This document shows, one piece after another, positions 8,623-24,676 of a DNA stretch of 64,000 nt (position 1 is its first letter; the number at the start of each line of letters is the position of its first letter). The translations under genes were made by a program, and so were the position numbers. The notes below the pieces were generated by a model, which made no database searches, had not been told where the DNA came from, and was given only the letters and a program-made list of their open reading frames with translations. The stretch is taken from positions 186,001-250,000 of the IMG/VR virus record IMGVR_UViG_3300017917_003143. One strand, given 5' to 3'.

Positions 8623-9582
8623 ATGAGCAAAACTACTAAGATTCGTTGGGTTATCGCCCATGAGCCTTTGAACCTTTTCATCCGTGCCGCTGAAGACTTT
8701 GAGCGTCGTGTAAACGAGCAACAGAGCGAGCACAAGATCGAAGTTGAAATCATGACTCTCACAGAGTACAGCCAGCGTTACAACGATGGCGTGGTTGTGA
8801 CCAAGCATGACCTACTAGATCTCATGGAAGCAGGCAAGATCGAAATGAGCCAGATGTACACAACATGGCTCGCTGAGAAGTATGAACAAGACTTCTTGGT
8901 GTTCGACCTTCCTTTCTTGTTCAAGGATCACGAGCATGCAACCCGTGTGCTAGAAGGTGAAGTTGGTGAGACTCTTCTCAACAAACTCACAAACAAGTCA
9001 AATGTACGTGGCTTGAGTTTCACATACTCAGGCGGTTTCCGTCAGATGATTTCCAACAAGCAGGTCAGCACACTAGAAGAACTTGCTGGCACACCAGTGC
9101 GTTCAAACCGTAACCCTGTTGCACAAGCAACTATTTCTGCATTGGGCATGAAGCCTGTTGTTGCCGAAGTAGAAGATCTGCGCAAGGTCGTGGTCGAAGG
9201 TGAAGCTGAAGGTGGCGAAACCAACTACCCACGTATGTACCCACTACGTCAGAATGAAGTTACCAAGTCAGTGATTGACACAGGCCACAGCTTGTTCCTC
9301 ACATCAATGATCATTGGTGACAAGTTCTGGGATAGCCTTAGCCCCGAAGTACAGGCTGTGATCAAGCAAGCCGCTATTCTTGCAGGTCGCGAAGAGCGTG
9401 CCGAAACCATCCGTGATGGTGCTCGTGCCGAGCGTCGCCTTGTTGAAGAAGAAGGTGCCAATATCGTTAAGTGGACACAAGAGCAACGTGATGCCGCCAA
9501 GGCCGCGCTGTCAGGTGTTTACGATCAGTTCCGTGACACATTCACACCTGGTCTCATCGAAGCGATTGAGAAGAAGGCTTAA
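8623..9582 (+). CDS. dctP: TRAP transporter substrate-binding protein (DctP family)
   Basis: FDLPFLFKDHEHA; KFWDSLSPEVQAVI motifs. Confidence 0.9.
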   Translation: MSKTTKIRWVIAHEPLNLFIRAAEDFERRVNEQQSEHKIEVEIMTLTEYSQRYNDGVVVTKHDLLDLMEAGKIEMSQMYTTWLAEKYEQDFLVFDLPFLFKDHEHATRVLEGEVGETLLNKLTNKSNVRGLSFTYSGGFRQMISNKQVSTLEELAGTPVRSNRNPVAQATISALGMKPVVAEVEDLRKVVVEGEAEGGETNYPRMYPLRQNEVTKSVIDTGHSLFLTSMIIGDKFWDSLSPEVQAVIKQAAILAGREERAETIRDGARAERRLVEEEGANIVKWTQEQRDAAKAALSGVYDQFRDTFTPGLIEAIEKKA

Positions 9583-9608
9583 TAGGTAGTAATTTTGTAT
9601 TACACAAG

Positions 9609-9634
9609 AAACCCTACCTAGTGTAGGGTTTTTT
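9609..9634 (+). terminator. intrinsic terminator
   Basis: AAACCCTAC-CTAGT-GTAGGGTTT followed by T-run. Confidence 0.85.
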
Positions 9635-9635
9635 G

Positions 9636-9749
9636 TTGACAGCAAAAAGAAAACCGCATACAATCACTGCTGAGATATAAATATCTTCACAACAAGATCA
9701 ACTTTTTGAGCAACCAGGGGTTGACAAGGAATAAATAAACATATACAAT
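9636..9749 (+). promoter_or_regulatory. promoter stack: two sigma70 promoters plus TATAAATA
   Basis: TTGACA 9636/TACAAT 9659; TATAAATA 9676-83; TTGACA 9721/TACAAT 9744; both spacers 17 bp. Confidence 0.85.
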
Positions 9750-9756
9750 AGATGCT

Positions 9757-9873
9757 ATGATGAACACTTTAAGATCATATTCGATATCATTTAAACAGAT
9801 GGAGCCAACAAGTCTCTTGTGGCACCCCACCTGCCTACGTAATGATGCGATTGGGATCGGGGGTTCTGAGTAG
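9757..9873 (+). CDS. 38-aa leaderless leader peptide (attenuator-like)
   Basis: ATG about 7 nt after the -10 box; MMNTLRSYSISFKQMEPTSLLWHPTCLRNDAIGIGGSE-TAG. Confidence 0.5.
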   Translation: MMNTLRSYSISFKQMEPTSLLWHPTCLRNDAIGIGGSE

Positions 9874-9903
9874 AAGTCAGACAGTAAAATATTCTACACA
9901 GGA

Positions 9904-9935
9904 CCCCAGGACTAAACACCCTGGGGTTTCTGTTT
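9904..9935 (+). terminator. terminator (3:4 hairpin of the putative attenuator)
   Basis: CCCCAGG-ACTAAACAC-CCTGGGG-TTTCTGTTT. Confidence 0.75.
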
Positions 9936-9955
9936 GTGCAAAAGGAAAAAAGAAG

Positions 9956-9984
9956 TTGACAGAAAAGATAGATTATAGTAAAAT
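9956..9984 (+). promoter_or_regulatory. sigma70-type promoter
   Basis: TTGACA-17 bp-TAAAAT. Confidence 0.7.
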
Positions 9985-10139
9985 TGCCGATCGTATTGTT
10001 GAACAAGTAGTTGAGCATTCAAGGTTCGTGTTAGACGAACATCAGATGCAACGATTGCTTCAAGGCAAGATTGATCGAGCTCGACGAGAAGTTGAAGCCA
10101 GGGCAACATGCCCAATATGGCATACTGATCGATAGGTCG

Positions 10140-10350
10140 AGCACAGTGGACGTAGGCAACGAGGGCCGTGAGACCACTTTAAAAAAGCTCTAAACGGGCG
10201 GGGTCCTGGATGAAATCCTTGGCGGTAACAAGGAAAGTAAAATAGGCAAGCGGAGGATGTCTCCGCTTTGGCTCTGGCAACAGAGCCCATATTGAAGCAC
10301 ATTGCCGAACAGTCAAATGGCAATAGCCGATGAGTAGTGTGTTTCAATAT
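10140..10350 (+). ncRNA. cluster of GC-rich hairpins, unassigned structured RNA
   Basis: CCTTG/CAAGG, AGCGGAG/CTCCGCT, GGCTCTG/CAGAGCC stems and a terminal ATATTGAAGCAC/GTGTTTCAATAT helix; no credible ORF. Confidence 0.5.
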
Positions 10351-10386
10351 GTCGAACAAGTTTCCAAACGCCGTTAAATAATCGCG

Positions 10387-10983
10387 ATGGAAAACTTAAA
10401 AATAAACAATCCTTTGATCAAAGAAATTTGTCAAAGATTCACGACTCTACAATACAATGATGGCCTGCCAAGCAAAGCAGTAAAATGGGAAGCCAACGAT
10501 GACTATGAAACAGCATCGGCTCAAGCCACAGCAGATCAATCCTTGAGAAACATATTACAAGGGCATCAGCATATAAAAAAGTCTTGCTACAAAATTTTTG
10601 GCGAGACACCTGCTGGAAGCTATTTTCTCAACGAACTTAAAAAACTAATCAAGTATGACAGTTATTACACTGCGGCATACTGGCCAAGAGGATTTATTGG
10701 GTGGCATACAGACAGCGATATAAAAGGACACTGCCTATTATGGACCTGGACTGCTGAAGGACAAGGATTTTTCAAATACAGAGATCCCAACACTGATACG
10801 ATCATCCAAGTCGATGATCAACCAGGTTGGAGCGTCAAGGCCATGCGCCTCGGAGATCAGGACACAGATAGACTGTGGCACTGTGCAGCCGGTGTTGGAT
10901 CAAGATGGTCGTTTGTTTTAATGTACGATGATGATCATACAGATCTTTATCAGAGTGCTAAATCGTTTATTTTATCAAAATAA
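10387..10983 (+). CDS. cupin / 2OG-Fe(II) oxygenase-like protein
   Basis: GWHTD...LWHCA (HxD...H); TAAATA just upstream. Confidence 0.55.
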   Translation: MENLKINNPLIKEICQRFTTLQYNDGLPSKAVKWEANDDYETASAQATADQSLRNILQGHQHIKKSCYKIFGETPAGSYFLNELKKLIKYDSYYTAAYWPRGFIGWHTDSDIKGHCLLWTWTAEGQGFFKYRDPNTDTIIQVDDQPGWSVKAMRLGDQDTDRLWHCAAGVGSRWSFVLMYDDDHTDLYQSAKSFILSK

Positions 10984-10987
10984 TTTA

Positions 10988-11077
10988 GGGGGTTGTTCTC
11001 TACGGCGGACTGTAAATCCGTTGCCTTTAATATGTAGAGTGGCCGGCGATTAGGTTCGATTCCTTCAGCCCCCACCA
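10988..11077 (+). tRNA. atypical tRNA-Tyr (GTA) lacking a canonical D arm
   Basis: Acceptor GGGGGTT/AGCCCCC-A-CCA; GCGGA-CTGTAAA-TCCGT; T loop TTCGATT. Confidence 0.7.
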
Positions 11078-11084
11078 AGTTTAC

Positions 11085-11159
11085 GGTCCTATCGATTAGG
11101 GGTAAAGTCATCGCCCTGTCACGGCGAAGTCACGGGTTCGAATCCCGTTGGGACCGCCA
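11085..11159 (+). tRNA. tRNA-Asp (GTC)
   Basis: Cloverleaf; TCGCC-CTGTCAC-GGCGA; CCA. Confidence 0.95.
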
Positions 11160-11165
11160 GTTTAT

Positions 11166-11242
11166 TCCTCAGTAGCACAGTTGGTAGTTGCGCTTGACTG
11201 TTAATCAAGATGTCGGTGGTTCGAGCCCACCCTGGGGAGCCA
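11166..11242 (+). tRNA. tRNA-Asn (GTT)
   Basis: Cloverleaf; CTTGA-CTGTTAA-TCAAG; CCA. Confidence 0.95.
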
Positions 11243-11244
11243 AG

Positions 11245-12051
11245 TTAGTAAGGCCATTTATAGATATCTTGTATCTTTAATGGAACAGAGTTGACTTTTG
11301 ATTTGTTATACAGTCGGATGATCACTCGTTTGTTTGTTTCACCAAAAGAGTAAAGAGAGTCCGACAGCTCTTGTCTGACAAAATCCGGCACATTTTTTTC
11401 TGAGATTATATCTTCATAGGTAGGCCAATCATCGCCTTGTACATTGATATATTCCTCATAGGTTATGTGTCGCAACTCTTTGGGTGATGGATTTCCGTGA
11501 CATTGTACATAATCGCAAGCGAATCCAAATATCTGGGCGACTTGTAATATCCATGATATGTTTGGTGTACCAATAGGAACTATGTTGCAATTTCCAAATG
11601 CACCGTTGGTATCTACGTGTACACTTTCAAAACTCCAGACCATTTCTGGATTAAGTGATTCTGGTCCGAACACTGTTTCCATCAAACAGTGACTGACATT
11701 GGGATTTAAAATTTGAGAGAAAAATTGGAAATGATTGTGCAAGTGATATAACAATCCTAACACTATCACAGTGTCGCTTTGTTTGACCAATGGTGATATC
11801 AGATCTTTGTCGGTCACATCGCCTACAACAAAATCAATGTTAGAGTGAGTGATTCTTTGTTTGGCTTGCTCTATCAGATGAGATCTGATGTCGACTGCAA
11901 AAACATGTTTGGCACCAAGATTTAAGATATGAGAAGTAGATAGTCCGTTGTTGCAGGCTAAATCTAAGACATTTTTATTTTTGATTATATCAAGATTTTG
12001 TCGTAGATATGTCGACATTGGAATGTTTGAAACAGATTTGATGTCTTGCAT
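11245..12051 (-). CDS. class I SAM-dependent methyltransferase (CmoB-like), antisense inside the tRNA array
   Basis: VLDLACNNG motif I; VIVLGLLYHL; start reassigned to MQDIK at 12051. Confidence 0.8.
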   Translation of the reverse strand: MQDIKSVSNIPMSTYLRQNLDIIKNKNVLDLACNNGLSTSHILNLGAKHVFAVDIRSHLIEQAKQRITHSNIDFVVGDVTDKDLISPLVKQSDTVIVLGLLYHLHNHFQFFSQILNPNVSHCLMETVFGPESLNPEMVWSFESVHVDTNGAFGNCNIVPIGTPNISWILQVAQIFGFACDYVQCHGNPSPKELRHITYEEYINVQGDDWPTYEDIISEKNVPDFVRQELSDSLYSFGETNKRVIIRLYNKSKVNSVPLKIQDIYKWPY

Positions 12052-12093
12052 GATAATAATTATCCAACAACTGATTACTTGAACCAATTTTAT

Positions 12094-12184
12094 GCCCCTG
12101 TAGTTTAATGGTAAAACAGCGGATTTATATCCCGTAGCAACAGATAATTGGTTAATGCAGGTTCGACTCCTGCCGGGGGTACCA
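12094..12184 (+). tRNA. tRNA-Ile (TAT) with 21-nt variable region
   Basis: GCGGA-TTTATAT-CCCGT; GCAGG-TTCGACT-CCTGC; CCA. Confidence 0.75.
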
Positions 12185-12190
12185 GTTAAT

Positions 12191-12267
12191 GTATCGGTAG
12201 TTCCAACTGGCAGAACGACAGTCTCCAAAACTGTATGATGGGGGTTCGAATCCCTCCCGGTACGCCA
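12191..12267 (+). tRNA. tRNA-Trp (CCA)
   Basis: ACAGT-CTCCAAA-ACTGT; CCA. Confidence 0.95.
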
Positions 12268-12273
12268 AATAAT

Positions 12274-12351
12274 GCAACGGTGGCAGAGTGGCCCAATGCA
12301 ACGGATTGCAAATCCGTAAAACCGCTGGTTCAAATCCAGCCCGTTGCTCCA
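12274..12351 (+). tRNA. tRNA-Cys (GCA)
   Basis: ACGGA-TTGCAAA-TCCGT; U73; CCA. Confidence 0.95.
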
Positions 12352-12427
12352 TTTACGTGATGCTTGAACCTGGCCCTGAAAGCCAGTCTGCACTTTTGAC
12401 CTATGCAGGGCCTCTCACAACATTTTA

Positions 12428-12517
12428 GGAAGTGTGGCAGAGTCCGGTTTATTGCACCTGTCTTGAAAACAGACGATCAGAAATGGTCCGTGAGTTCGAA
12501 TCTCACCGCTTCCGCCA
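12428..12517 (+). tRNA. tRNA-Ser (TGA)
   Basis: CTTGAAA loop; long variable arm; G73. Confidence 0.95.
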
Positions 12518-12528
12518 AATAGAAATAC

Positions 12529-12618
12529 GGAGAGGTCCCATAATGGTATTGGAGCGGATTGCTAATCCGTCGACTTGCGAAAGCAGGTTTCTGGGTTCAA
12601 GTCCCAGTCTCTCCGCCA
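12529..12618 (+). tRNA. tRNA-Ser (GCT)
   Basis: TTGCTAA loop; long variable arm; G73. Confidence 0.95.
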
Positions 12619-12619
12619 T

Positions 12620-12697
12620 ACGCCTGTAGCTCAGTTGGACCAGAGTATCACGCTACGAACGTGAGGGCCGGAGGTTCGAATCCTTCCAGGCGTGCCA
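12620..12697 (+). tRNA. tRNA-Arg (ACG)
   Basis: TCACG-CTACGAA-CGTGA; CCA. Confidence 0.95.
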
Positions 12698-12706
12698 GAA
12701 TACGAT

Positions 12707-12783
12707 GGTGTAGTTAGTGTCAGCGGTCAGCACTACGGATTGTGATCCCGTCAGCATGGGTTCGAATCCCATACTACACCCCA
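12707..12783 (+). tRNA. tRNA-His (GTG)
   Basis: G-1:C73; TTGTGAT loop; CCA. Confidence 0.93.
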
Positions 12784-12791
12784 TACAATTT

Positions 12792-12868
12792 GCCCCGGTG
12801 ACGGAATTGGTATACGTGTTGGTCTTAGAAACCAAATTTTAGGAGTTCGAGTCTCCTCTGGGGCACCA
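12792..12868 (+). tRNA. tRNA-Leu (TAG), short variable loop
   Basis: TTGGT-CTTAGAA-ACCAA; 5-nt variable loop; A73. Confidence 0.9.
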
Positions 12869-12874
12869 AACATC

Positions 12875-12958
12875 GCGACTGTGGTGGAATCGGTAGACAC
12901 AGCAGACTTAAAATCTGCCGCTTATAGCGTGCCGGTTCGATTCCGGCCAGTCGCACCA
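12875..12958 (+). tRNA. tRNA-Leu (TAA)
   Basis: GCAGA-CTTAAAA-TCTGC; long variable arm. Confidence 0.95.
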
Positions 12959-12974
12959 TGATATAAGTATTGAT

Positions 12975-13694
12975 ATGAAAAATATTGTCATTGCTGGAGA
13001 TTCTTGGGGTTGCGGCGAATGGGCTGAACAACATGATTCAAGCGACGATCAATATCTGTTACACAAAGGTGTGGCACAATATCTTTCTGACGACGGTCAT
13101 TTTGTTATAAATGTGGCCAAAGGCGGAATCTCTAATTTCCAAGCTGTAGATCGACTTGATAGACTATTGGATCAAATCTGCGATACATCGAAAATAGATT
13201 TTATTCTATTCTTCCAGTCTGAGTGGAGCAGAGACATAGATTTTAGCCAGTTAGATAAGTCATATACAGAATTAAAATCAACTCTAATGTCGAGTGTGTA
13301 TTATACACTCAGCCAGTTGGCCCAGAAGTATCAAGTCAAGATACACCTAATAGGCGGCATGGCTGATACTGTAAAATTAGAGGATTGGAACACAGAATAT
13401 CCTGGTACAGAGATACTGTGCCAAAGCATGTTTAATTTTGTCAAACACAATGACAAAGATATCAATGCTCCTGTGCATGATTGTTTTTTATTATTAGATC
13501 CTGCAAAGATACAACAACTCAAGAGCAAATCTAACATGGACTTAGAAACCATAGTCGATGACATCGACCTGGCAAATACTCGATTAAAAAATCTCCGAGA
13601 CTGCACCGAGCTGTTTTGGCCCGACGGAGTACATGCCAATCGAGTAGCTCATAAAAAATTACATGAGTTAATCAACGAACAATTGATGCAGTAA
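12975..13694 (+). CDS. SGNH/GDSL hydrolase-like protein
   Basis: IAGDSW; DGVHAN C-terminal motif. Confidence 0.75.
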   Translation: MKNIVIAGDSWGCGEWAEQHDSSDDQYLLHKGVAQYLSDDGHFVINVAKGGISNFQAVDRLDRLLDQICDTSKIDFILFFQSEWSRDIDFSQLDKSYTELKSTLMSSVYYTLSQLAQKYQVKIHLIGGMADTVKLEDWNTEYPGTEILCQSMFNFVKHNDKDINAPVHDCFLLLDPAKIQQLKSKSNMDLETIVDDIDLANTRLKNLRDCTELFWPDGVHANRVAHKKLHELINEQLMQ

Positions 13695-13768
13695 TCATAC
13701 AATAAGTTTCGCGAGTACATCAATGCGTCTCCTTGACAGACACGCCGCTTGAGTCTCGCACCCAATAA

Positions 13769-13847
13769 CCGAGTGTAGGAAAGTCTGGTTCAATCCGCCT
13801 GCTTTGGGAGCAGGAGACCGAAGGTTCGAATCCTTCCACTCGGACCA
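13769..13847 (+). tRNA. tRNA-Pro (TGG)
   Basis: CCTGC-TTTGGGA-GCAGG; CCA. Confidence 0.95.
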
Positions 13848-13853
13848 TTTAAT

Positions 13854-13932
13854 GCCCCCTTGGACAAATTGGTAAAGTCGTCTCTCTCAAAAGGAGAAGT
13901 TGTTCTCAGTTCGAATCTGAGAGGGGGTACCA
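13854..13932 (+). tRNA. tRNA-Leu (CAA), short variable region
   Basis: TCTCT-CTCAAAA-GGAGA; 7-nt variable region; A73. Confidence 0.85.
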
Positions 13933-13935
13933 TAT

Positions 13936-14010
13936 GCAGGTATAATTCAGTGGTAGAATGTCTCGTTGCCAACGAGAATGTCGTCGGTTCGAACCCGACT
14001 ACCTGCTCCA
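13936..14010 (+). tRNA. tRNA-Gly (GCC)
   Basis: TCTCG-TTGCCAA-CGAGA; U73. Confidence 0.95.
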
Positions 14011-14015
14011 CACAT

Positions 14016-14092
14016 GCATCCTTAACTCAGCTGGCCAGAGTGCCCTCCTTACAAGTGGGAAGTCGGGAGTTCGAATCTCTCAGGATGCACCA
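14016..14092 (+). tRNA. tRNA-Val (TAC)
   Basis: CTTACAA loop; CCA. Confidence 0.93.
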
Positions 14093-14095
14093 AGT

Positions 14096-14314
14096 TTTGT
14101 TGTAGTGTTAGCAAGAGAAAGACACGCTGGCTAGGTTTCTTCGAAGGACCGAATCAGTAGAAGGTGGCGGGTTCGATGCCCGACGGATCGGAAGATCCGG
14201 GTACATGGTGGCGTACTATCTGGTCCGGTATCCCAAGTAACGTACCGAGTCCTGCCCGGGCTAGTTAATCCAGGTGAATGGTGTCAATAACGATGGTGAC
14301 ACGTCTGCAACAAA
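14096..14314 (+). ncRNA. unassigned ~220-nt structured RNA between tRNA-Val and tRNA-Phe
   Basis: Ends pair (TTTGTTGTAG/CTGCAACAAA); T-loop hairpin CGGG-TTCGATG-CCCG; CGGATC-GGAA-GATCCG; GTGTC/GACAC. Confidence 0.65.
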
Positions 14315-14322
14315 TTCAATAT

Positions 14323-14398
14323 GCCGCTTTAGCTGATGTGGTCATAGCAACGGACTGAAAATCCGTGGAACCCTGTTCGATCCGGGGAGGCGGCACCA
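14323..14398 (+). tRNA. tRNA-Phe (GAA)
   Basis: ACGGA-CTGAAAA-TCCGT; CCA. Confidence 0.95.
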
Positions 14399-14402
14399 AC
14401 AA

Positions 14403-14476
14403 GCCCTATTCGTATAATGGTATTACGTCGGTTTTGTAATCCGAATACGGGAGTTCGATTCTCTCATGGGGCACCA
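14403..14476 (+). tRNA. tRNA-Thr (TGT)
   Basis: TTTGTAA loop; CCA. Confidence 0.93.
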
Positions 14477-14512
14477 TGTTTACCGTTTTGTTGTTTTTGG
14501 ACAACAAGGCAG

Positions 14513-14572
14513 TTGACGATGAAAACACTTTAGCCTACAATAGAGGCTTAGTTAGTTAAATGTTCTTTAAAA
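14513..14572 (+). promoter_or_regulatory. sigma70 promoter followed by a Nus boxA-like element
   Basis: TTGACG-17-TACAAT; TGTTCTTTAAAA at 14561-72. Confidence 0.7.
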
Positions 14573-14590
14573 ATTTAAATGTATAGTCCT

Positions 14591-14699
14591 TATACACATG
14601 AGCACTAAAGGCTAAAGAGCTCGGCCCATGTTGCGGAAACAGCTTCGCCTTTTGGCGTGGTTGGTAGGTTCAATTCCTACAAAGTGTTCAGCTGTATAA
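14591..14699 (+). ncRNA. tRNA-like RNA without CCA or a canonical anticodon loop
   Basis: Acceptor-like GAGCACT/AGTGTTC; T arm GTAGG-TTCAATT-CCTAC; CGCC-TTTT-GGCG arm; outer TATAC/GTATA helix. Confidence 0.55.
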
Positions 14700-15585
14700 G
14701 GATTCGGGGGAGTCTAATCTCCTGTAGGCGGCTTGCCGTCTACGAAGGATAAGTGCCGTGAGGTGCCCAAAGATGCGATGCCTACACAACATCGCCAGCA
14801 ATGGTCCATTTAGACAAGCCTGCTCACACCCGTGAGGGTGCGTTCACTGAGAAGACCGGTGGATGTAACAGCAAAGCTGATGTAGTGGAAAGAACGCTGA
14901 TCGACAGGCCGCAAGGAACCTGGGTCGGTGGAAAGTAACAGGTGGTGCTGACTTCACTACAAAACCAATCAGTCAACTGGTATGAGAAAGGGTAGTGTGT
15001 TGGTCCGAAGGGTCGCTCCTAAGGGCTGGCATGCAGTATTAGTGGTCCGTGGGTTGCGTCGTGAGACGTGGCACATAGGTCGCAAAATACGACTGAGTAA
15101 TCCGCGAGATGAAAGGTACGTGGTGTGTTGTATTCTGCATTCCAAAAGAGTGTGGAGCAACTGAGGCAGCACATCATTGTAGGTTCGATATAGCCTAATG
15201 GTAGGGCGATTTCCTTCTAAGAAATAGACTGTTGGTTCGACTCCAACTATCAAACAAAAACGCAAAGACTGCCTCGGTCACGTGTGAAAAGCATCTAACG
15301 CTTCAGCCGTAAGGTAATGAAGTCAGACGTAGCTCGCAAGGTGAAATCTGTTTATGCTGGAAGTTTCGTAAGGTGTTAGCGCACCTGAATGGCTCGCAAG
15401 GTCAACGGAGAAGAAAGCGTAGAGTAGCATGTGATGTCAAGACTACTGCCTGTCTTTAAACGGCGATGCTGGTAGCAGACCGAGATACCGCAAGGGTTTC
15501 GGTGGATGTCAGGAGAAGGTACGCTCGCAAGGTGTACTATAATGCCTGAGGTGTTACTGGGCAAGGTGTAATCTCAGCCTTCCAC
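14700..15585 (+). ncRNA. giant structured ncRNA, probably GOLLD
   Basis: About 890 nt without a credible ORF; many GNRA-capped hairpins (CGCAAG, CGTGAG, CGTAAG); sits in a phage tRNA array; ends at a terminator. Family assigned from size, context and recalled 3' motif, not from a covariance search. Confidence 0.7.
15184..15256 (+). tRNA. tRNA-Arg (TCT)-like cloverleaf embedded in the giant ncRNA
   Basis: TTCGATA/TATCAAA acceptor with one mismatch; ATTTC-CTTCTAA-GAAAT; GTTGG-TTCGACT-CCAAC; no CCA. Confidence 0.7.
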
Positions 15586-15592
15586 AATCAAC

Positions 15593-15615
15593 AAAACCGC
15601 TCCGGCGGTTTTTTC
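15593..15615 (+). terminator. intrinsic terminator after the giant ncRNA
   Basis: AAAACCGC-TCCG-GCGGTTTT followed by T-run. Confidence 0.85.
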
Positions 15616-15624
15616 TTTTTCTGT

Positions 15625-15698
15625 TCGGGTGTAGTGTAATGGTAACACCACAGACTTTGACTCTGTTATTCTAGGTTCGAGCCCTAGCACCCGTGCCA
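15625..15698 (+). tRNA. tRNA-Gln (TTG)
   Basis: ACAGA-CTTTGAC-TCTGT; CCA. Confidence 0.93.
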
Positions 15699-15700
15699 TT

Positions 15701-15774
15701 GCTCCTATAGGTAAATGGTATACCGACGCCATGGTAAGGCGTAATTCTAAGTTCGATCCTTGGTGGGAGCACCA
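15701..15774 (+). tRNA. tRNA-Thr (GGT)
   Basis: ACGCC-ATGGTAA-GGCGT; CCA. Confidence 0.9.
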
Positions 15775-15826
15775 GGATTTTTAAAGGAGAGACTGTCATG
15801 TCTAGTGACAAGAGTGACAAACTGTT

Positions 15827-15901
15827 GGGGGTGTGGTGAAATGGTATCACAGCAGACTTTTAATCTGCCAATTTCGGGTTCGAGTCCCGGCGCCCCTACC
15901 A
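15827..15901 (+). tRNA. tRNA-Lys (TTT)
   Basis: GCAGA-CTTTTAA-TCTGC; CCA. Confidence 0.95.
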
Positions 15902-15959
15902 TATAAAAACACATTACTAAGAGTCCATATTCAGAGCGTGGCATAGTGTGTTTCTATAT
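15901..15959 (+). repeat. spacer hairpin element, second copy of 10289-10350
   Basis: ATATAAAAACACATT...TAGTGTGTTTCTATAT. Confidence 0.7.
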
Positions 15960-16035
15960 GGTAACGTAGCATAGCGGCTAATGCACCACCTTCATACGGT
16001 GTTTATCGTGGGTTCGAGTCCCACCGTTACTACCA
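15960..16035 (+). tRNA. tRNA-Met (CAT, elongator)
   Basis: TTCATAC loop; G1:U72 paired. Confidence 0.85.
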
Positions 16036-16039
16036 ATTT

Positions 16040-16115
16040 CCGCCCGTAGTCTAATGGATAAGGCAACGGTCTTCTACACCGTCAGATGTGGGTTCGACTC
16101 CTGCCGGGCGGGCCA
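16040..16115 (+). tRNA. tRNA-Arg (TCT)
   Basis: ACGGT-CTTCTAC-ACCGT; CCA. Confidence 0.93.
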
Positions 16116-16121
16116 AAAATA

Positions 16122-16196
16122 CGGCCCTTAGTTCAATGGATAGAATGCGATGCTTCGAACTTCGAGATGTGGGTTCGATTCCTGCAGGGCCGGCCA
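16122..16196 (+). tRNA. tRNA-Arg (TCG)
   Basis: CTTCGAA loop; CCA. Confidence 0.9.
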
Positions 16197-16200
16197 AATC

Positions 16201-16274
16201 GCTCGGATAGTTAAATGGTATAACGGTCGCTTGATAAGCGATTATTCCAAGTTCAATTCTTGGTCTGAGCACCA
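16201..16274 (+). tRNA. tRNA-Ile (GAT)
   Basis: GTCGC-TTGATAA-GCGAT; CCA. Confidence 0.93.
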
Positions 16275-16370
16275 AAAATATTTGCCAAACTTGTCAACGA
16301 GCGTGTGGTCTACGGCGTTATATGTATAGCACATCACAAATTGTGCTGTTTCTAAACAAAGGAGAACTTT

Positions 16371-16568
16371 ATGAAACTCGTAGCTACACTAATCGCAAGT
16401 TTGTTCGCTGTATCCGCTTTCGCACAGGCACCTGCTGCCAAGAAAGAAGAAGCCAAGCCAGCCGCGGCTGCTCCAGCACCTGCTGCCAAGCCAGCAGAGA
16501 AAAAAGCTGAGCCTGCCAAAAGCGACGCTAAAAAAGACGACAAAAAAGCCGACGCTCCTAAGAAGTAA
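16371..16568 (+). CDS. secreted Ala/Lys/Pro-rich small protein
   Basis: AAGGAG SD; signal peptide ending AFA; PAAKK/PAEKK repeats. Confidence 0.85.
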   Translation: MKLVATLIASLFAVSAFAQAPAAKKEEAKPAAAAPAPAAKPAEKKAEPAKSDAKKDDKKADAPKK

Positions 16569-16755
16569 TCCTGCTCATGTCATCGTACTCACGTTGGATG
16601 ACAGTGAGTACGAGTTTGAAGGAGATGATTACCTACATGTAGGATATCGAAGACCTGAACTGATCCATGTTTACTTTGACGAAGATGTTGAACTAAGCGA
16701 TCATGTAAAGTTTAGGTTATGGCTTGCCAGACAACTGGCGTTAAAGAAGTACAAG

Positions 16756-16785
16756 GAAACCTGGGGATGACCCGGGTTTCTTTTT
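16756..16785 (+). terminator. intrinsic terminator
   Basis: GAAACCTGGG-GATGA-CCCGGGTTTC-TTTTT. Confidence 0.7.
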
Positions 16786-16859
16786 GGGGGATTAGTTAAA
16801 TGGGATAACATCGGCTTTGCAAGCCGAGATTGAGAGTTCGATTCTCTCATCCTCCACCA
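16786..16859 (+). tRNA. tRNA-Ala (TGC)
   Basis: G3:U70; TTTGCAA loop; CCA. Confidence 0.95.
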
Positions 16860-16864
16860 AACAC

Positions 16865-16893
16865 TTGACAGTCACTAAATATTTTAGTAAAAT
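16865..16893 (+). promoter_or_regulatory. sigma70-type promoter
   Basis: TTGACA-17-TAAAAT. Confidence 0.75.
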
Positions 16894-16914
16894 AAAGTAT
16901 CCAAGGAGACTGCG

Positions 16915-17076
16915 ATGCAACAAGAAAAAACACCAGTGCCACAATATTTTTTCTCTCCCGGAGAATGGGATAGATTAGGATGCGGACCATTGCCGCCTGA
17001 GCGCAATCGTGATTTACAGAAAGCCATGGAACGCAGTGTTGAACACAAAGAAGACACAGGCAAAGGATATAACTGA
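16915..17076 (+). CDS. small hypothetical protein (53 aa)
   Basis: AAGGAG SD; MQQEKTPVPQYFFSPGEWDRLGCG. Confidence 0.7.
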   Translation: MQQEKTPVPQYFFSPGEWDRLGCGPLPPERNRDLQKAMERSVEHKEDTGKGYN

Positions 17077-17304
17077 TGGGATGGATAGCAGTATTGATTA
17101 TTGGTTGTTTGGTCGTTTATTTCATGGTCAAAAGCAAAGATCATGAAAACGATGAGTAAATAAGATTACTATGCGAGAGTATGCACCCAGCGGCGCTCCT
17201 GGATCTGCTGGCAATGTTGATGTGGTGAGAGGCCACAGGTCGCGCGAAGACCGTACATGTCTCGATAGTTTCGTGAACTGCCTACAACGCCCAAGACAGT
17301 AGGA

Positions 17305-17673
17305 GTTAGCCGAAAGGCCATGCGGGCATTATTGTTGTAATCCCTTCAAAACGAAGGCATGTTGGACGTGGGTTCGATTCCCACCAGGTCCACCAAAAGA
17401 GGATTAAAGTATGGATGACGATTTGGCAAGATTTGCGATGGGTATGGTAGCTGTGATCGTCATTGGAGCCATAGTCCTTTTCTGATGGGCCTGACCAGGT
17501 TTCGACAGCGTGAGATAGTGGAGACGGCAACACGGCAAAGCAGAAGCCGTAGGATTGGGGATTCCCGGTCGTAGAAGCAAAAAAAAGTAAACGCAAATGA
17601 TGAGGTTTACGCTTTAGCCGCTTGATCGGTTAAATGAGGATTCCCAGGTGTTCCTTATCACCCAAACACCTGG
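17305..17673 (+). ncRNA. ssrA: circularly permuted (two-piece) tmRNA
   Basis: T arm and acceptor 3' strand CAGGTCC-A-CCA end at 17395, upstream of the 5' end GGGCCTGACCAGGTTTCGAC at 17487 (G3:U70); tag frame 17593-17625 ANDEVYALAA-TGA; 5' boundary approximate. Confidence 0.92.
17411..17485 (+). CDS. 24-aa hydrophobic micro-protein inside the tmRNA intervening segment
   Basis: GAGGA SD; MDDDLARFAMGMVAVIVIGAIVLF-TGA. Confidence 0.6.
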   Translation: MDDDLARFAMGMVAVIVIGAIVLF

Positions 17674-17722
17674 TTGACTTCTTTTGTTTTTTCTCGTATA
17701 ATTACACATTCGCTCTTTAATA
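17674..17722 (+). promoter_or_regulatory. sigma70 promoter plus boxA-like element
   Basis: TTGACT-17-TATAAT; CGCTCTTTAATA at 17711-22. Confidence 0.8.
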
Positions 17723-17736
17723 ATTGACAGCATTAT

Positions 17737-17811
17737 GCTCGGTTCGTCTATCGGTCAGGACACCGCCCTTTCACGGCGGGAAGAGGGGTTCGATTCCCCT
17801 ACCGAGTACCA
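17737..17811 (+). tRNA. tRNA-Glu (TTC)
   Basis: CCGCC-CTTTCAC-GGCGG; CCA. Confidence 0.95.
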
Positions 17812-17942
17812 TAAGAAAACTCTTTGAAGTGTGGCTACACTGGAGAACAGTAAACTTCCGATGAAACCGGTCGAAGGAAGAACCTGCCAGGAAGATACGG
17901 AGCTATACAGTCGGGTTCGATTCCTGCAAAGAGTTTTCTTAT
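17811..17942 (+). ncRNA. Y RNA (YrlA)-like tRNA mimic
   Basis: 15-bp terminal helix ATAAGAAAACTCTTT/AAAGAGTTTTCTTAT; T loop GGG-TTCGATT-CCT; CTTCC/GGAAG stem carrying GTCGAAGG. Confidence 0.5.
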
Positions 17943-17944
17943 GG

Positions 17945-18405
17945 TAAGTGATGTGAGAGAAAGTGGTTAGTCACCACCCCGATTGCCAGGGGATGACACC
18001 ACCCTCGACCGCTGTGGGCCGCAAGGACCATGATCGTTTGACTAACGATCGAACACATGTTGGAGGGGAGATGGTAGCCAGGATACGCAATGAGCTCGAC
18101 GTGCTCGCGATCGTTGTAGGTTACGCACTCTTAAACACGCAGGCAGTATCGCTATCCATAATCTACATAGACTCAACAGTGATGCATTATTATATTCCTG
18201 GTGCTACTATAAGCTGGGGCCACTCACTGCTATGTTTAGCGACGCTAGATCGATCCGAGTATCCGGTAGTTTTCTAGCCTCTCGCAACCCCAATCGGTCT
18301 GGGCTAAACTCTGTGCTCTGTATGATCGGCCTCGACAGCTGGTCCTCTGCATCGCAGGTCACTGAGCATCAACACAGACTCCGCATAATCGTAAGCGGAA
18401 CTAAC
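17945..18405 (+). ncRNA. unassigned large (~460 nt) structured RNA
   Basis: Several local hairpins and three long-range complementarities (see findings); lies between RNA genes; no credible ORF. Confidence 0.6.
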
Positions 18406-18408
18406 AAT

Positions 18409-18483
18409 CGCGGAGTATATCAGTGGCAGATGGCGAGTCTCATAAGCTCGAGGTCAGTGGTTCGAATCCACTCTCCGCAACCA
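18409..18483 (+). tRNA. tRNA-fMet (CAT)-like
   Basis: C1:A72 mismatch; CTCATAA loop; anticodon stem lacks the usual three G-C pairs. Confidence 0.8.
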
Positions 18484-18488
18484 AAAAT

Positions 18489-18562
18489 GCAGGGTTCGTA
18501 TAGTGGTAATACCTCAGCCTTCCAAGCTGATGCGGAGAGTTCGATTCTCTTACCCTGCTCCA
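18489..18562 (+). tRNA. tRNA-Gly (TCC)
   Basis: TCAGC-CTTCCAA-GCTGA; U73. Confidence 0.95.
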
Positions 18563-22492: not shown

Positions 22493-22566
22493 GCCCTGTT
22501 AGTTAAATGGTATAACAGTTGATTTGTAATCATCAATTGGCAGTTCGATTCTGTCACGGGGCACCA
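22493..22566 (+). tRNA. tRNA-Thr (TGT), second copy outside the array
   Basis: TTTGTAA loop; CCA. Confidence 0.9.
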
Positions 22567-23432: not shown

Positions 23433-24620
23433 ATGTTTAAAAAAATTGTTATCGCAGGTGCAATCGCAGCCGTGGCTGCCGGTACTGCCCTAGCACAAAG
23501 TACGCCTACTGCCAGTAGCAATCTTGGCGGGGGAGTTCAAGTTTATGGTATCATGGACATGGGCGTGATGAGCGCCAACAAAGTAGGAGCAGCCAATGGC
23601 AGTCTCACTACAACTGTTTGTGGTATCGACCAGACATGCCGTCTGGGTTTTCTAGCATCTGAAGACCTCGGTGGTGGTTTAAAAGCTGGTGCTAAATTGG
23701 AAAGCCAGATCGACGGATCCAGTGCCAACGGTAGTTCAGGATCACAAGGTCTTGGTTCTGCTTCTGGTTCTGCCAATGCTGTGTTTAGCCGTGGTGCCAA
23801 CGTATTCCTTGATCATTCTAAATATGGTCGTTTGACCATGGGTCGTCAGGACAATGCGGCTTGGTCTACATATTCGTCATTGGATGGTCGTAGAAACTCA
23901 AACTTTGGTTCTATCACCAACTTCATCGCTGACGGTTCTAGCTTTGGTGGTACTAGTACAGCCAAAACAGGTCTAGCCAACTACACTGGTTCACCATTTA
24001 CCAGCAACACAATTCGTTATGACACGCCATCATTCTACGGTTTTAACGCCACATACGCTCGTGTGTTTGGCAACACCGCAGGCGATGCCGACAAGAGCTC
24101 TGCAGATCAATATGTTCTGCGCTATGACAACAACGGTATGTTCTATGGTGCTGTTGGTTCATACAAAGTCAACAACTCGTCAGGCAATGCCGCAGGTGAA
24201 AACCTCTTTGCCGGTGTTGGTGCTCGTGTAACCAAGGACTTGACATTGACTACTAGCTATTTCAATCTCAAGAACCCTAGCAACGTATCTGGCACCAACG
24301 GAGATTATGATCTCTACAGCCTAGGTGCTCGTTATCGAGTCAATCCCAAAGTTGATGTTACCGCAGGTCTCTATCAACTCAAAGACAACAATAACTCAGC
24401 CAACGGAGCAAGCCTCCAGTCAGCACAAGTTACATACTCGTTTAGCCGTCGTACACAGGTATATCTAGCAGGCTCGTTTGTGCAAAACAAAGGTGCCACA
24501 GGTATCGCAGCCTATGGTGGTGGTGGTGCTAACTTGAACTCTCTAGGGACAAGCAACTACTTGGCAGCCGCTGGGGTAGATCAATCAGCTTATGCAGTTG
24601 GTCTACGTCACTCGTTCTAA
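23433..24620 (+). CDS. Gram-negative (betaproteobacterial-type) porin
   Basis: Signal peptide; VQVYGIMD; RLGFLASEDLGGGLKA; C-terminal VGLRHSF. Confidence 0.93.
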   Translation: MFKKIVIAGAIAAVAAGTALAQSTPTASSNLGGGVQVYGIMDMGVMSANKVGAANGSLTTTVCGIDQTCRLGFLASEDLGGGLKAGAKLESQIDGSSANGSSGSQGLGSASGSANAVFSRGANVFLDHSKYGRLTMGRQDNAAWSTYSSLDGRRNSNFGSITNFIADGSSFGGTSTAKTGLANYTGSPFTSNTIRYDTPSFYGFNATYARVFGNTAGDADKSSADQYVLRYDNNGMFYGAVGSYKVNNSSGNAAGENLFAGVGARVTKDLTLTTSYFNLKNPSNVSGTNGDYDLYSLGARYRVNPKVDVTAGLYQLKDNNNSANGASLQSAQVTYSFSRRTQVYLAGSFVQNKGATGIAAYGGGGANLNSLGTSNYLAAAGVDQSAYAVGLRHSF

Positions 24621-24637
24621 ATCAAGAACGTACAATC

Positions 24638-24670
24638 AAAAACACACAGGAAACCCCTGTGTGTTTTTTT
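24638..24670 (+). terminator. intrinsic terminator
   Basis: AAAAACACACAGG-AAACC-CCTGTGTGTTTTTTT. Confidence 0.85.
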
Positions 24671-24676
24671 TGACTT

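What the first reader, a model, noticed from the sequence alone, without database searches (positions are those of the whole stretch)
9721..9935. Four-segment attenuator-like leader upstream of the tRNA island, with a peptide using 19 of 20 amino acids
Seen: a promoter gives a leaderless 38-codon ORF using every amino acid except Val and ending in TAG. Segment 1 ACCCC (9824-28, in Trp-His-Pro codons) can pair with segment 2 GGGGT (9860-64). Segment 2 GGGGTTCT can instead pair with segment 3 AGGACCCC (9900-07). Segments 3 and 4 form a terminator with a T tract. This is trp-attenuator geometry. Amber read-through would also run the ribosome to TAA 9915, into the terminator stem. Inference: a sensor of translation or tRNA shortage that could turn on the downstream RNA genes. 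Caveat: another sigma70 promoter (9956-84) lies just past the terminator, so the unit may be a stand-alone small RNA or peptide.
Basis: partly seen in the sequence, partly recalled or inferred. Interest (0 to 1): 0.7.

Follow-up and report, generated by a model that had tools for sequence, protein, structure and literature searches.

The report
All-amino-acid leader attenuator before phage tRNAs
A jumbo phage puts a tiny gene whose 38-codon peptide uses almost every amino acid, wired to an on/off RNA switch, in front of its tRNA genes; this probably lets it make tRNAs only when translation runs slowly, and the same device heads the tRNA arrays of dozens of related uncultured phages.

Summary
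A consensus promoter (9721-9749) puts ATG 9757 about 7 nt after the -10 box. The 38-codon ORF (9757-9873) uses 19 of 20 amino acids. A hairpin plus T tract lies at 9903-9935. The useful alternative pairing is larger than reported: a 15-bp hairpin (9860-9875 with 9892-9907) holds the last ORF codons and the TAG stop, and shares ACCCC with the terminator's 5' arm.

Pattern and covariance searches gave 83 distinct units in IMG/VR phage contigs. Both helices covary. The stop codon lies inside the antiterminator 5' arm in 83/83. Of 44 units with enough downstream DNA, 43 head a same-strand tRNA array. 51/83 leader peptides (median 43 aa) contain all 20 amino acids and 18 more contain 19; chance gives about 1-3%.

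Two points fail. The 1:2 pairing is no better than chance. The "second promoter" at 9956-84 is the TTG start of a conserved small protein.

Best reading: a three-segment, ribosome-dependent transcription attenuator. Fast translation to the stop frees the terminator. Any slow codon leaves the antiterminator in place and lets RNA polymerase read into a small protein gene, a new structured RNA and the tRNA island. No experiment has tested this, and I found no published description.

The parts
9721..9749 (+). Promoter P2: -35 TTGACA (9721-26), 17-nt spacer with a conserved ATAAATAAAC core, -10 TACAAT (9744-49).
   Evidence: 11/12 match. The whole 31-nt pattern recurs in 43 IMG/VR stretches and only once in this genome.
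9757..9873 (+). Leader ORF: 38 codons plus TAG. The ATG lies 7 nt after the -10 box, so the mRNA is probably leaderless. The peptide has 19 amino-acid types (no Val) and 33 distinct codons.
   Evidence: Homologous ORFs of 26-53 aa occur in 83 units.
9860..9907 (+). Antiterminator hairpin. The outer helix pairs 9860-9868 with 9899-9907 and the inner helix pairs 9870-9875 with 9892-9897. The 5' arm holds codons 35-38 and the TAG stop (9871-73).
   Evidence: Folding: (-22.7 kcal/mol). Covariation: (251/304 cells paired against 199.8 +/- 3.8 when partners are shuffled).
9903..9935 (+). Intrinsic terminator: stem 9903-9910 with 9920-9927, loop ACTAAACAC, T-rich tail 9927-9935. Its first 5 nt (ACCCC, 9903-07) are also the last 5 nt of the antiterminator.
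   Evidence: 98.4% of cells paired, 4 of 7 pairs changed on both sides, covariation 0.368 against 0.188 +/- 0.019, 0/500 shuffles as high.
9956..10135 (+). First gene past the terminator: a conserved 59-aa protein of unknown function. TTG start, AAGGA Shine-Dalgarno at 9942-46.
   Evidence: 47 of 83 units have a homologous 45-61-aa ORF starting 15-37 nt after the T tract, mostly with ATG.
10136..10365 (+). Conserved structured non-coding RNA of unknown family, lying between the attenuator and the tRNAs.
   Evidence: 48 distinct copies; 11 of 13 predicted pairs show compensatory changes. No Rfam match, best E = 0.8.
10988..18562 (+). Same-strand RNA island presumed to be controlled. It holds a probable tRNA-Tyr (10988-11077), 28 ARAGORN tRNAs, a GOLLD RNA (15120-15580) and a permuted tmRNA (17303-17716). 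A further tRNA-Thr lies at 22493-22566, outside this range. Later promoter-like sites at 14513, 16865 and 17674 may drive the distal part.
9636..9664 (+). Upstream promoter-like site P1 (TTGACA-17-TACAAT). It would give the leader ORF an 85-nt 5' UTR. It is found only in the window and in L009, so it is not part of the conserved unit.

Best explanation
The region is a ribosome-dependent transcription attenuator with three RNA segments, placed at the head of the phage's tRNA/ncRNA operon.

How it would work:
1. Host RNA polymerase starts at P2 and makes an mRNA that begins at, or one base before, AUG.
2. A ribosome loads at once and translates a 38-codon leader that contains about one codon for nearly every amino acid.
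3. As the polymerase moves on, segment 2 (the last leader codons plus the stop) and segment 3 fold into a strong antiterminator hairpin. This hairpin holds the first 5 nt of the terminator stem.
4. If the ribosome has kept pace and sits on the last 7-10 codons or the stop when segment 4 emerges, segment 2 is held single-stranded. Segments 3 and 4 then fold and transcription ends at about 9930-9935.
5. If the ribosome is absent, late, or stalled at any earlier codon, the antiterminator persists. Causes could be a scarce charged tRNA, amino-acid shortage, tRNA cleavage or a codon/tRNA mismatch with the host. The polymerase then reads on into the small protein gene, the structured RNA and the tRNA array.
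6. Because the leader carries all (here 19) amino acids, it acts as an OR gate over the whole aminoacyl-tRNA pool. Newly made phage tRNAs would speed leader translation and shut the operon down again, which is negative feedback.

Shown: the anatomy, its conservation, covariation, energetics, amino-acid composition and genomic position.
Inferred: translation of the ORF, the direction of the switch, the nature of the signal, and the feedback.
For: - Family size. The promoter pattern gave 32 distinct units. A covariance model and a pattern based only on the terminator added more. One uniform pipeline gave 83 distinct units.
- Terminator helix. 98.4% of cells are paired and 4 of 7 pairs changed on both sides. 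No shuffle out of 500 scored as high, and slid controls collapse.
- Antiterminator outer helix. Position 5 is CG 49 / TA 14 / TG 8. Position 6 is CG 45 / TA 25. 251 of 304 cells pair, against 199.8 +/- 3.8 when partners are shuffled. The inner helix differs between clades (GTAGAA/TTCTAC, GAGTAT/ATACTC, GTGTAT/ATACAC, GTAAAC/GTTTAC).
- Mutual exclusivity. The two helices share CCC plus one more base.
- RNA-level constraint. The GGG of segment 2 falls in all three reading frames (29/32/22). Even so, the stop codon lies 6-27 nt after it in 83 of 83 units.
- Energetics at the decision point (RNA ending in GGG+U). The antiterminator is more stable than the terminator in 81 of 83 units. The medians are -22.3 and -17.1 kcal/mol; the window gives -22.7 and -15.6. 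The terminator therefore needs segment 2 to be occupied.
- Stall map. With the A site anywhere in codons 1-32 the nascent RNA sequesters the terminator arm. In the last 6 positions (the last five sense codons and the stop) the arm is free; codon 33 is borderline.
- Composition. 51 of 83 leaders have all 20 amino acids and 18 have 19. Of 20 clusters at 45% identity, 8 have a median member with all 20, where about 1.1% is expected. Fisher combined P = 1.8e-7.
- Window codons. They match 26 of 28 anticodon species of the island; the background is 17.8 +/- 2.4, P = 8e-5.
- Position. 43 of 44 units with at least 2.5 kb downstream are followed by 3 or more same-strand tRNAs. The median gap is 478 nt and no tRNA lies on the opposite strand.
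- Start. The ATG lies 6-10 nt after the -10 box in 58 of 83 units.
- Control within the genome. None of the genome's other similar terminator-like sites has such an antiterminator.
Against: - No experiment exists and the phage is uncultured. Neither the transcription start nor translation of the ORF has been observed.
- Metatranscriptome contigs show only that relatives' leaders occur in RNA libraries. Some contigs end in the T tract and others run on. DNA carry-over cannot be excluded.
- With the whole leader RNA and the T tract allowed to pair, the terminator state is the minimum-energy fold in the window (-55.9 against -49.2). The estimated refolding barrier is modest (median 7.3 kcal/mol). 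The default state therefore rests on kinetics that were not measured.
- Some clades have only 13-18 amino-acid types.
- Codon diversity beyond amino-acid diversity is only modest (window P = 0.025; many clades not significant).
- In the window, Gly lies only at the edge of the sensing zone and Val is absent, although the island has tRNA-Val.
- Conserved residues (one Trp, an Asn/Asp-Asp-Arg stretch) could point to a peptide-specific role.
- Later promoter-like sites at 14513, 16865 and 17674 may free part of the island from this control.
Confidence: 0.65

Rival explanations
1. The architecture is the same, but the signal is ribosome or initiation capacity in general rather than the charged-tRNA pool. 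Examples are 70S availability for a leaderless mRNA, host shut-off, or translation inhibitors. The all-amino-acid content would then be secondary.
For: The leaderless start is conserved in 58 of 83 units. The default state without a ribosome is read-through. From my own knowledge, attenuators that respond to ribosome-targeting antibiotics through uORF stalling are known in Firmicutes.
Against: This does not explain why 69 of 83 leaders hold 19-20 amino-acid types. It also does not explain why the window's codons touch 26 of 28 of the island's anticodon species. The unit sits specifically before tRNA arrays.
Confidence: 0.13
2. The peptide is a sequence-specific arrest peptide, as in tnaC or speFL. 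It would stall the ribosome in response to a small molecule or factor, and the stalled ribosome would set the RNA switch.
For: One Trp occurs in 96% of peptides, about 16-22 residues before the stop. An Asn/Asp-Asp-Arg-like stretch recurs.
Against: The Trp-to-Asp spacing varies from 8 to 15 residues. The C-terminal residues are read in different frames over a conserved RNA motif. Peptide sequences diverge below 45% identity into 20 clusters. If every amino acid must appear once, rare ones such as Trp look conserved without any arrest role.
Confidence: 0.07
3. The unit is a stand-alone early gene for a small protein, or a small RNA, with its own promoter and terminator. The big hairpin only stabilises the 3' end and the downstream genes are expressed independently.
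For: Promoter, short ORF and terminator is a common phage module. Some RNA contigs of relatives end at the T tract.
Against: There is no conserved promoter between the terminator and the tRNAs, because the 9956-84 site is a gene start. The hairpin overlaps the terminator arm and out-competes it in 81 of 83 units, which would defeat a constitutive terminator. The position before tRNA arrays is constant. The composition is left unexplained.
Confidence: 0.08
4. The unit is an amber-suppression switch. The phage's tRNA with a CUA anticodon (2959-3033) would read the leader's TAG. The ribosome would then run on to TAA 9913-15 and cover segment 3, which blocks the terminator.
For: ARAGORN calls a CUA-anticodon tRNA at 2959-3033. 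The extended frame is open up to the terminator loop. TAG is the rarest stop among long ORFs, 21 of 276.
Against: 54 of 83 leaders end in TAA and 3 end in TGA, so this cannot be the family's mechanism. ORF lengths give no sign that TAG is recoded.
Confidence: 0.03

Closest known systems
Leader-peptide attenuators of amino-acid biosynthetic operons in enterobacteria (trpL, hisL, leuL, thrL, ilvL, pheL) and of pheST (pheM)
   Same: All have a short translated leader ORF, mutually exclusive antiterminator and terminator hairpins, and an intrinsic terminator before the regulated genes. The ribosome's position on the leader decides which hairpin forms. A ribosome that reaches the stop favours termination. 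The stop-to-T-tract distance of about 55-65 nt is similar.
   Different: Here there are no runs of one regulatory codon. Instead there is about one codon for each of the 20 amino acids. No 1:2 pause or anti-antiterminator helix is present. The mRNA is probably leaderless. The controlled genes are phage tRNAs, a structured RNA and a small protein, not enzymes or a synthetase.
Leaderless polycysteine short ORFs acting as attenuators in mycobacteria (bioRxiv 10.1101/834739, listed)
   Same: A leaderless short ORF at the 5' end of an operon whose translation senses amino-acid supply and tunes downstream expression.
   Different: Those ORFs are Cys-rich and specific for one amino acid. They lie in bacterial chromosomes and do not rest on the antiterminator/terminator pair seen here.
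T-box riboswitches
   Same: They read tRNA charging status and switch between an antiterminator and a terminator to control translation-related genes.
   Different: T-boxes bind one uncharged tRNA directly and have no ORF. They sense one tRNA species and control synthetase or amino-acid genes. Rfam found no T-box or any other family here.
uORF attenuators that respond to translation inhibition (erm and cat leaders; Bacillus and Listeria antibiotic-responsive leaders). This comparison is from my own knowledge.
   Same: A slowed or stalled ribosome on a short leader ORF changes the RNA fold and turns on the downstream genes.
   Different: Those depend on drug-specific arrest peptides. Many act on translation rather than transcription. 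They have no all-amino-acid composition and no link to tRNA genes.

Membership tests
Ribosome-mediated (leader-peptide) transcription attenuator | A short ORF in the 5' leader, conserved as an ORF | tested here: met
   An ORF of 26-53 aa is present in 83 distinct units despite peptide divergence below 45% identity. The stop is always in the same RNA element.
Ribosome-mediated (leader-peptide) transcription attenuator | An intrinsic terminator between the leader ORF and the regulated genes | tested here: met
   GC-rich 7-8-bp stem plus T tract. 98.4% of cells are paired and 4 of 7 pairs covary.
Ribosome-mediated (leader-peptide) transcription attenuator | An antiterminator helix that is mutually exclusive with the terminator | tested here: met
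   The helices share 4-5 nt (9903-07). The helix covaries. It is more stable than the terminator in 81 of 83 units at the decision point.
Ribosome-mediated (leader-peptide) transcription attenuator | The ORF overlaps the switch, so that ribosome position selects the fold | tested here: met
   The stop codon lies 6-27 nt inside the antiterminator 5' arm in 83 of 83 units, in any frame relative to GGG. Stall simulation.
Ribosome-mediated (leader-peptide) transcription attenuator | Termination efficiency responds to translation of the leader | not testable with these tools
   This needs reporter assays, in vitro coupled assays or Term-seq. Only metatranscriptome contigs of relatives were available.
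trp-type four-segment attenuator | A 1:2 helix (pause / anti-antiterminator) upstream of 2:3 | tested here: not met
   The best upstream duplex with segment 2 is no stronger than with shuffled sequence. The window gives -11.1 against -10.9 +/- 2.3, and the mean z over 32 units is +0.29.
trp-type four-segment attenuator | Tandem regulatory codons for the amino acid made by the operon | tested here: not met
   There are no codon runs. Each amino acid appears about 1-5 times and rare ones about once.
T-box riboswitch or any other Rfam cis-regulator | A match to the family's covariance model | tested here: not met
   No Rfam hit in 9700-9940 at E up to 1.

The most novel reading that the evidence does not exclude
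Phages have evolved a 'pangram' leader peptide: a roughly 40-codon ORF with every amino acid. It would work as a 20-input OR gate on the charged-tRNA pool and give closed-loop control of the phage's own tRNA array. The array would switch on when any tRNA or amino acid is limiting, including after cleavage by host anticodon nucleases or loss of host tRNAs. It would switch off once the phage tRNAs restore the speed of translation. In some relatives, secondary units inside the arrays and leaders lacking an amino acid would tune sub-arrays.
Probability: 0.5. Interest if true: 0.9.

Novelty: new variant of a known kind. Interest (0 to 1): 0.85.

Why it matters
How phages regulate their tRNA genes is largely unknown, and tRNA arrays are usually described only as cargo. 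This unit suggests a simple sensor that measures the speed of translation through all amino acids and couples it to tRNA supply.

If true, it extends classical attenuation in three ways. It moves from sensing one amino acid to sensing the whole pool. It gives a testable link between phage tRNAs and host tRNA-targeting defences or codon mismatch. It also offers a compact part for synthetic biology: a reporter of global or single-tRNA sufficiency.

The family also marks the 5' end of an operon that holds a new structured RNA and a conserved small protein, both now open to study.

Tried and rejected
- blastn of 9000-11100 against cultured phage genomes found nothing. There is no cultured relative to work from.
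- Rfam gave no family for the leader or for the downstream RNA.
- Pfam and PHROGs gave nothing for the 38-aa and 59-aa products.
- MAFFT alignments (A1, A2, A4) and the covariance-model alignment (A3) put the clades out of register over segment 2. I therefore counted the antiterminator pairs from fixed GGG/CCC anchors in a script. The tool was used only for the terminator.
- The equilibrium fold of the full leader with a ribosome placed at each codon gave mixed results outside two clades. The reason is that the T tract and distant upstream bases were allowed to pair. I replaced it with nascent-RNA and decision-point calculations.
- The 1:2 pairing was rejected.
- The second promoter was rejected.
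- TAG recoding was rejected: ORF coverage gives no support.
- Codon-level selection beyond amino-acid diversity is weak: P = 0.025 in the window and not significant in many clades.
- Leaders that lack an amino acid tend to head arrays that lack that tRNA (odds ratio 3.15, P = 0.047). The contigs are fragments and phylogeny was not controlled, so this is kept only as a lead.
- The scan of bacterial genomes gave a chance-level number of hits (49 found, about 69 expected). Only two carry the unit, both on short MAG contigs that are probably phage.
- Four literature searches found no description.
- RNA runs show relatives' leaders in metatranscriptomes but cannot separate terminated from read-through RNA.

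Full report
**Where the window lies.** The window is bases 186001-250000 of a 343,632-bp IMG/VR virus record with 45% G+C. It carries 32 ARAGORN tRNA genes, a permuted tmRNA and a GOLLD RNA. Host-like porin, TctA, TctC and DctP genes point to a Gram-negative host. The tmRNA model match suggests a betaproteobacterium. No cultured phage matches at the DNA level.

**What is at 9721-9935.**
- TTGACA-17-TACAAT lies at 9721-9749.
- The ATG at 9757 is 7 nt after the -10 box, so the mRNA probably starts at or one base before AUG.
- The ORF runs to TAG 9871-73. It has 38 codons and 19 amino-acid types, with Val missing.
- The nascent RNA up to 9912 folds into a 15-bp hairpin. 9860-9868 pairs with 9899-9907, and 9870-9875 pairs with 9892-9897. 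The stop codon sits in the inner helix.
- The terminator is 9903-9910 paired with 9920-9927, followed by a T-rich tail to 9935.
- The two structures share ACCCC at 9903-07.

**Relatives.**
- Neighbouring-gene searches gave first relatives with 80-87% identity.
- The 31-nt promoter pattern found 43 stretches, which made 32 distinct units.
- A covariance model found further units that lack the exact promoter pattern.
- A pattern taken only from the terminator loop and 3' arm found more than 120 stretches. Of 95 distinct ones, 73 have an upstream hairpin that pairs the terminator's CCC.
- One uniform pipeline gave 83 distinct units. It required a terminator-like site, an antiterminator, a sigma70 match of at least 9 of 12, and an ORF from the first ATG after the -10 box.
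- Bacterial genomes gave only chance-level hits.

**RNA structure.**
- Terminator: 98.4% of cells are paired and four of seven pairs changed on both sides. The covariation score is 0.368 against 0.188 +/- 0.019, with 0 of 500 shuffles as high. Slid partners collapse.
- Antiterminator: counted from the invariant GGG/CCC anchor on 76 distinct hairpins, position 5 is CG 49 / TA 14 / TG 8 and position 6 is CG 45 / TA 25 / GC 1. 251 of 304 cells are paired, against 199.8 +/- 3.8 for shuffled partners (for the first 37).
- The inner helix differs between clades but stays complementary.
- The base after CCC covaries with partners in both helices (A-T or G-C with segment 2; T-A or C-G with segment 4).
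- The GGG of segment 2 is read in all three frames (29/32/22), so it is constrained as RNA.
- The stop codon lies 6-27 nt after that GGG in all 83 units. The CCC of segment 3 follows the stop by 26-36 nt.

**Which fold wins.**
- When the RNA ends at GGG+U, the T tract is still inside the polymerase. At that point the antiterminator is more stable than the terminator in 81 of 83 units. The medians are -22.3 and -17.1 kcal/mol, and the window gives -22.7 and -15.6.
- The antiterminator is also made first. So the terminator needs segment 2 to be held open.
- With a ribosome A site anywhere in codons 1-32 of the window, the nascent RNA still sequesters the terminator arm. From codon 34 to the stop the arm is free; codon 33 is borderline.
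- With the full RNA and the T tract allowed to pair, the terminator state is the minimum-energy fold (-55.9 against -49.2). The path barrier is about 7 kcal/mol. The outcome therefore depends on timing, as in classical attenuators.

**The 1:2 pairing.** The best duplex between segment 2 and the upstream ORF is no stronger than with shuffled upstream sequence. The window gives -11.1 against -10.9 +/- 2.3, and the mean z over 32 units is +0.29. The device has three segments.

**The peptide.**
- 51 of 83 leaders (26-53 aa, median 43) contain all 20 amino acids. 18 contain 19 and 6 contain 18.
- Random windows of phage proteins of the same length average 16-17 types and reach 20 in about 1-3% of cases.
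- Of 20 clusters at 45% identity, 8 have a median member with all 20. Fisher combined P is 1.8e-7.
- Rare amino acids occur about once each: Trp 1.07, Cys 1.06, Phe 1.19 copies per peptide.
- The window's version lacks Val, where its close relative L002 has GTC in place of ATC.
- The window's 38 codons are read by 26 of the 28 anticodon species of the island. The background is 17.8 +/- 2.4, P = 8e-5. Against synonymous resampling the excess is modest: 22.9 +/- 1.5, P = 0.028.
- Some clades have fewer types (13-18), notably one that often sits inside arrays.

**Genomic position.**
- 43 of 44 units with at least 2.5 kb of downstream DNA are followed by three or more tRNAs on the same strand. The median gap is 478 nt, and no tRNA lies on the other strand.
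- In the window, the promoter scan finds only a weak promoter-like match (12027, 9 of 12) on the + strand between 9984 and 13917. Its only terminator-like hit between the attenuator and the first tRNAs lies inside the probable tRNA-Tyr.
- The genome has this promoter type and this hairpin arrangement only once.

**What lies just downstream.**
- The match at 9956-9984 is the TTG start of a conserved small protein (59 aa here). 47 of 83 units have a homologous ORF with a Shine-Dalgarno sequence 15-37 nt after the T tract, mostly with ATG.
- Next comes a structured RNA (10136 to about 10365). It is conserved in 48 distinct loci, and 11 of 13 predicted pairs show compensatory changes. It has no Rfam family.
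- In several relatives this RNA follows the terminator directly.
- The 198-aa ORF at 10387-10983 is an insertion shared only with L002.

**Interpretation.** The anatomy meets every sequence-level criterion of a leader-peptide attenuator except the 1:2 helix and the codon runs. The all-amino-acid leader and its fixed position before tRNA arrays fit a sensor of overall decoding speed. A delay at any codon would keep the antiterminator in place and let the tRNA operon be transcribed. Fast decoding would end transcription at about 9930. Feedback through the phage tRNAs is a natural consequence, but it is inferred.

A weak link exists between the amino acids a leader lacks and the tRNAs absent downstream (odds ratio 3.15, P = 0.047). 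It is a lead only.

Rival readings are scored in their own section. They are a general ribosome-availability sensor, an arrest peptide, a stand-alone gene and an amber-suppression switch. None of them explains the composition and the position together.

**RNA evidence.** Three freshwater or aquatic metatranscriptomes hold contigs of relatives that cover the leader. Some end in the T tract and others continue. These are assembled contigs, and DNA carry-over is possible.

**Novelty.** Four full-text searches found no description. The mechanism class is known. What is new is the all-amino-acid leader, the three-segment leaderless design, and the control of a phage tRNA/ncRNA operon.

Noticed in passing
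window 10136-10365 (and 48 loci, e.g. L057:11728-11964, L071:1889-2125): A conserved structured non-coding RNA lies between the attenuator and the tRNAs. It has an invariant hairpin loop AACGAG and an A(C/T)GGGCGG motif. 11 of 13 predicted pairs show compensatory changes, and it has no Rfam family. In some relatives it follows the terminator directly.
   Followed up: partly
window 9956-10135: A conserved small protein family (45-61 aa) with a recurring stretch like LT-E-Q--KLI--K-ERAR. It is the first gene after the terminator in 47 of 83 units. The window uses a TTG start. There is no Pfam or PHROG match.
   Followed up: partly
window 15120-15580: A full-length GOLLD RNA (Rfam RF02032, 220.9 bits) sits inside the tRNA island. 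A tRNA-Arg(TCT) lies at 15183-15256, within its span.
   Followed up: no
window 17303-17716: A permuted (two-piece) tmRNA with tag ANDEVYALAA. It scores best with the permuted and betaproteobacterial tmRNA models, which hints at the host.
   Followed up: no
window 2959-3033: A tRNA with a CUA (amber-reading) anticodon lies 6.7 kb upstream of the island, and a tRNA-Met lies at 3658-3734. TAG is the rarest stop among long ORFs (21 of 276). ORF lengths give no sign of TAG recoding.
   Followed up: partly
window 10988-11077: A probable type II tRNA-Tyr(GTA): acceptor stem, encoded CCA, anticodon loop CTGTAAA. ARAGORN misses it at default settings, and Rfam gives only a weak tRNA-Sec hit. Relatives have a called tRNA-Tyr at the same place.
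   Followed up: partly
window 7580-9582 and 23433-26014: The phage genome carries host-like transport genes: TctC-type and DctP-type solute-binding proteins just upstream of the unit, and a Gram-negative porin and TctA further on.
   Followed up: no
window 9611-9720: A terminator of the DctP-like gene (9611-9634) abuts a second consensus promoter P1 (9636-9664) and a short palindrome (AGATATAAATATCT). This is present only in the window and in L009, and its role is unknown.
   Followed up: no
L127/L217, L109, L116, L123, L155, L161: Some relatives carry a unit of a distinct sub-family, with peptides like MKT..SAWSHA.GR.NSIPG and 15-20 amino-acid types. It lies inside the array, with tRNAs (often Glu and Asp) upstream of it. 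Two units can occur on one contig.
   Followed up: partly
window 12094-12184: tRNA-Ile(TAT) is called at 91 nt, which is unusually long for an Ile tRNA. It may hold an insertion or intron.
   Followed up: no
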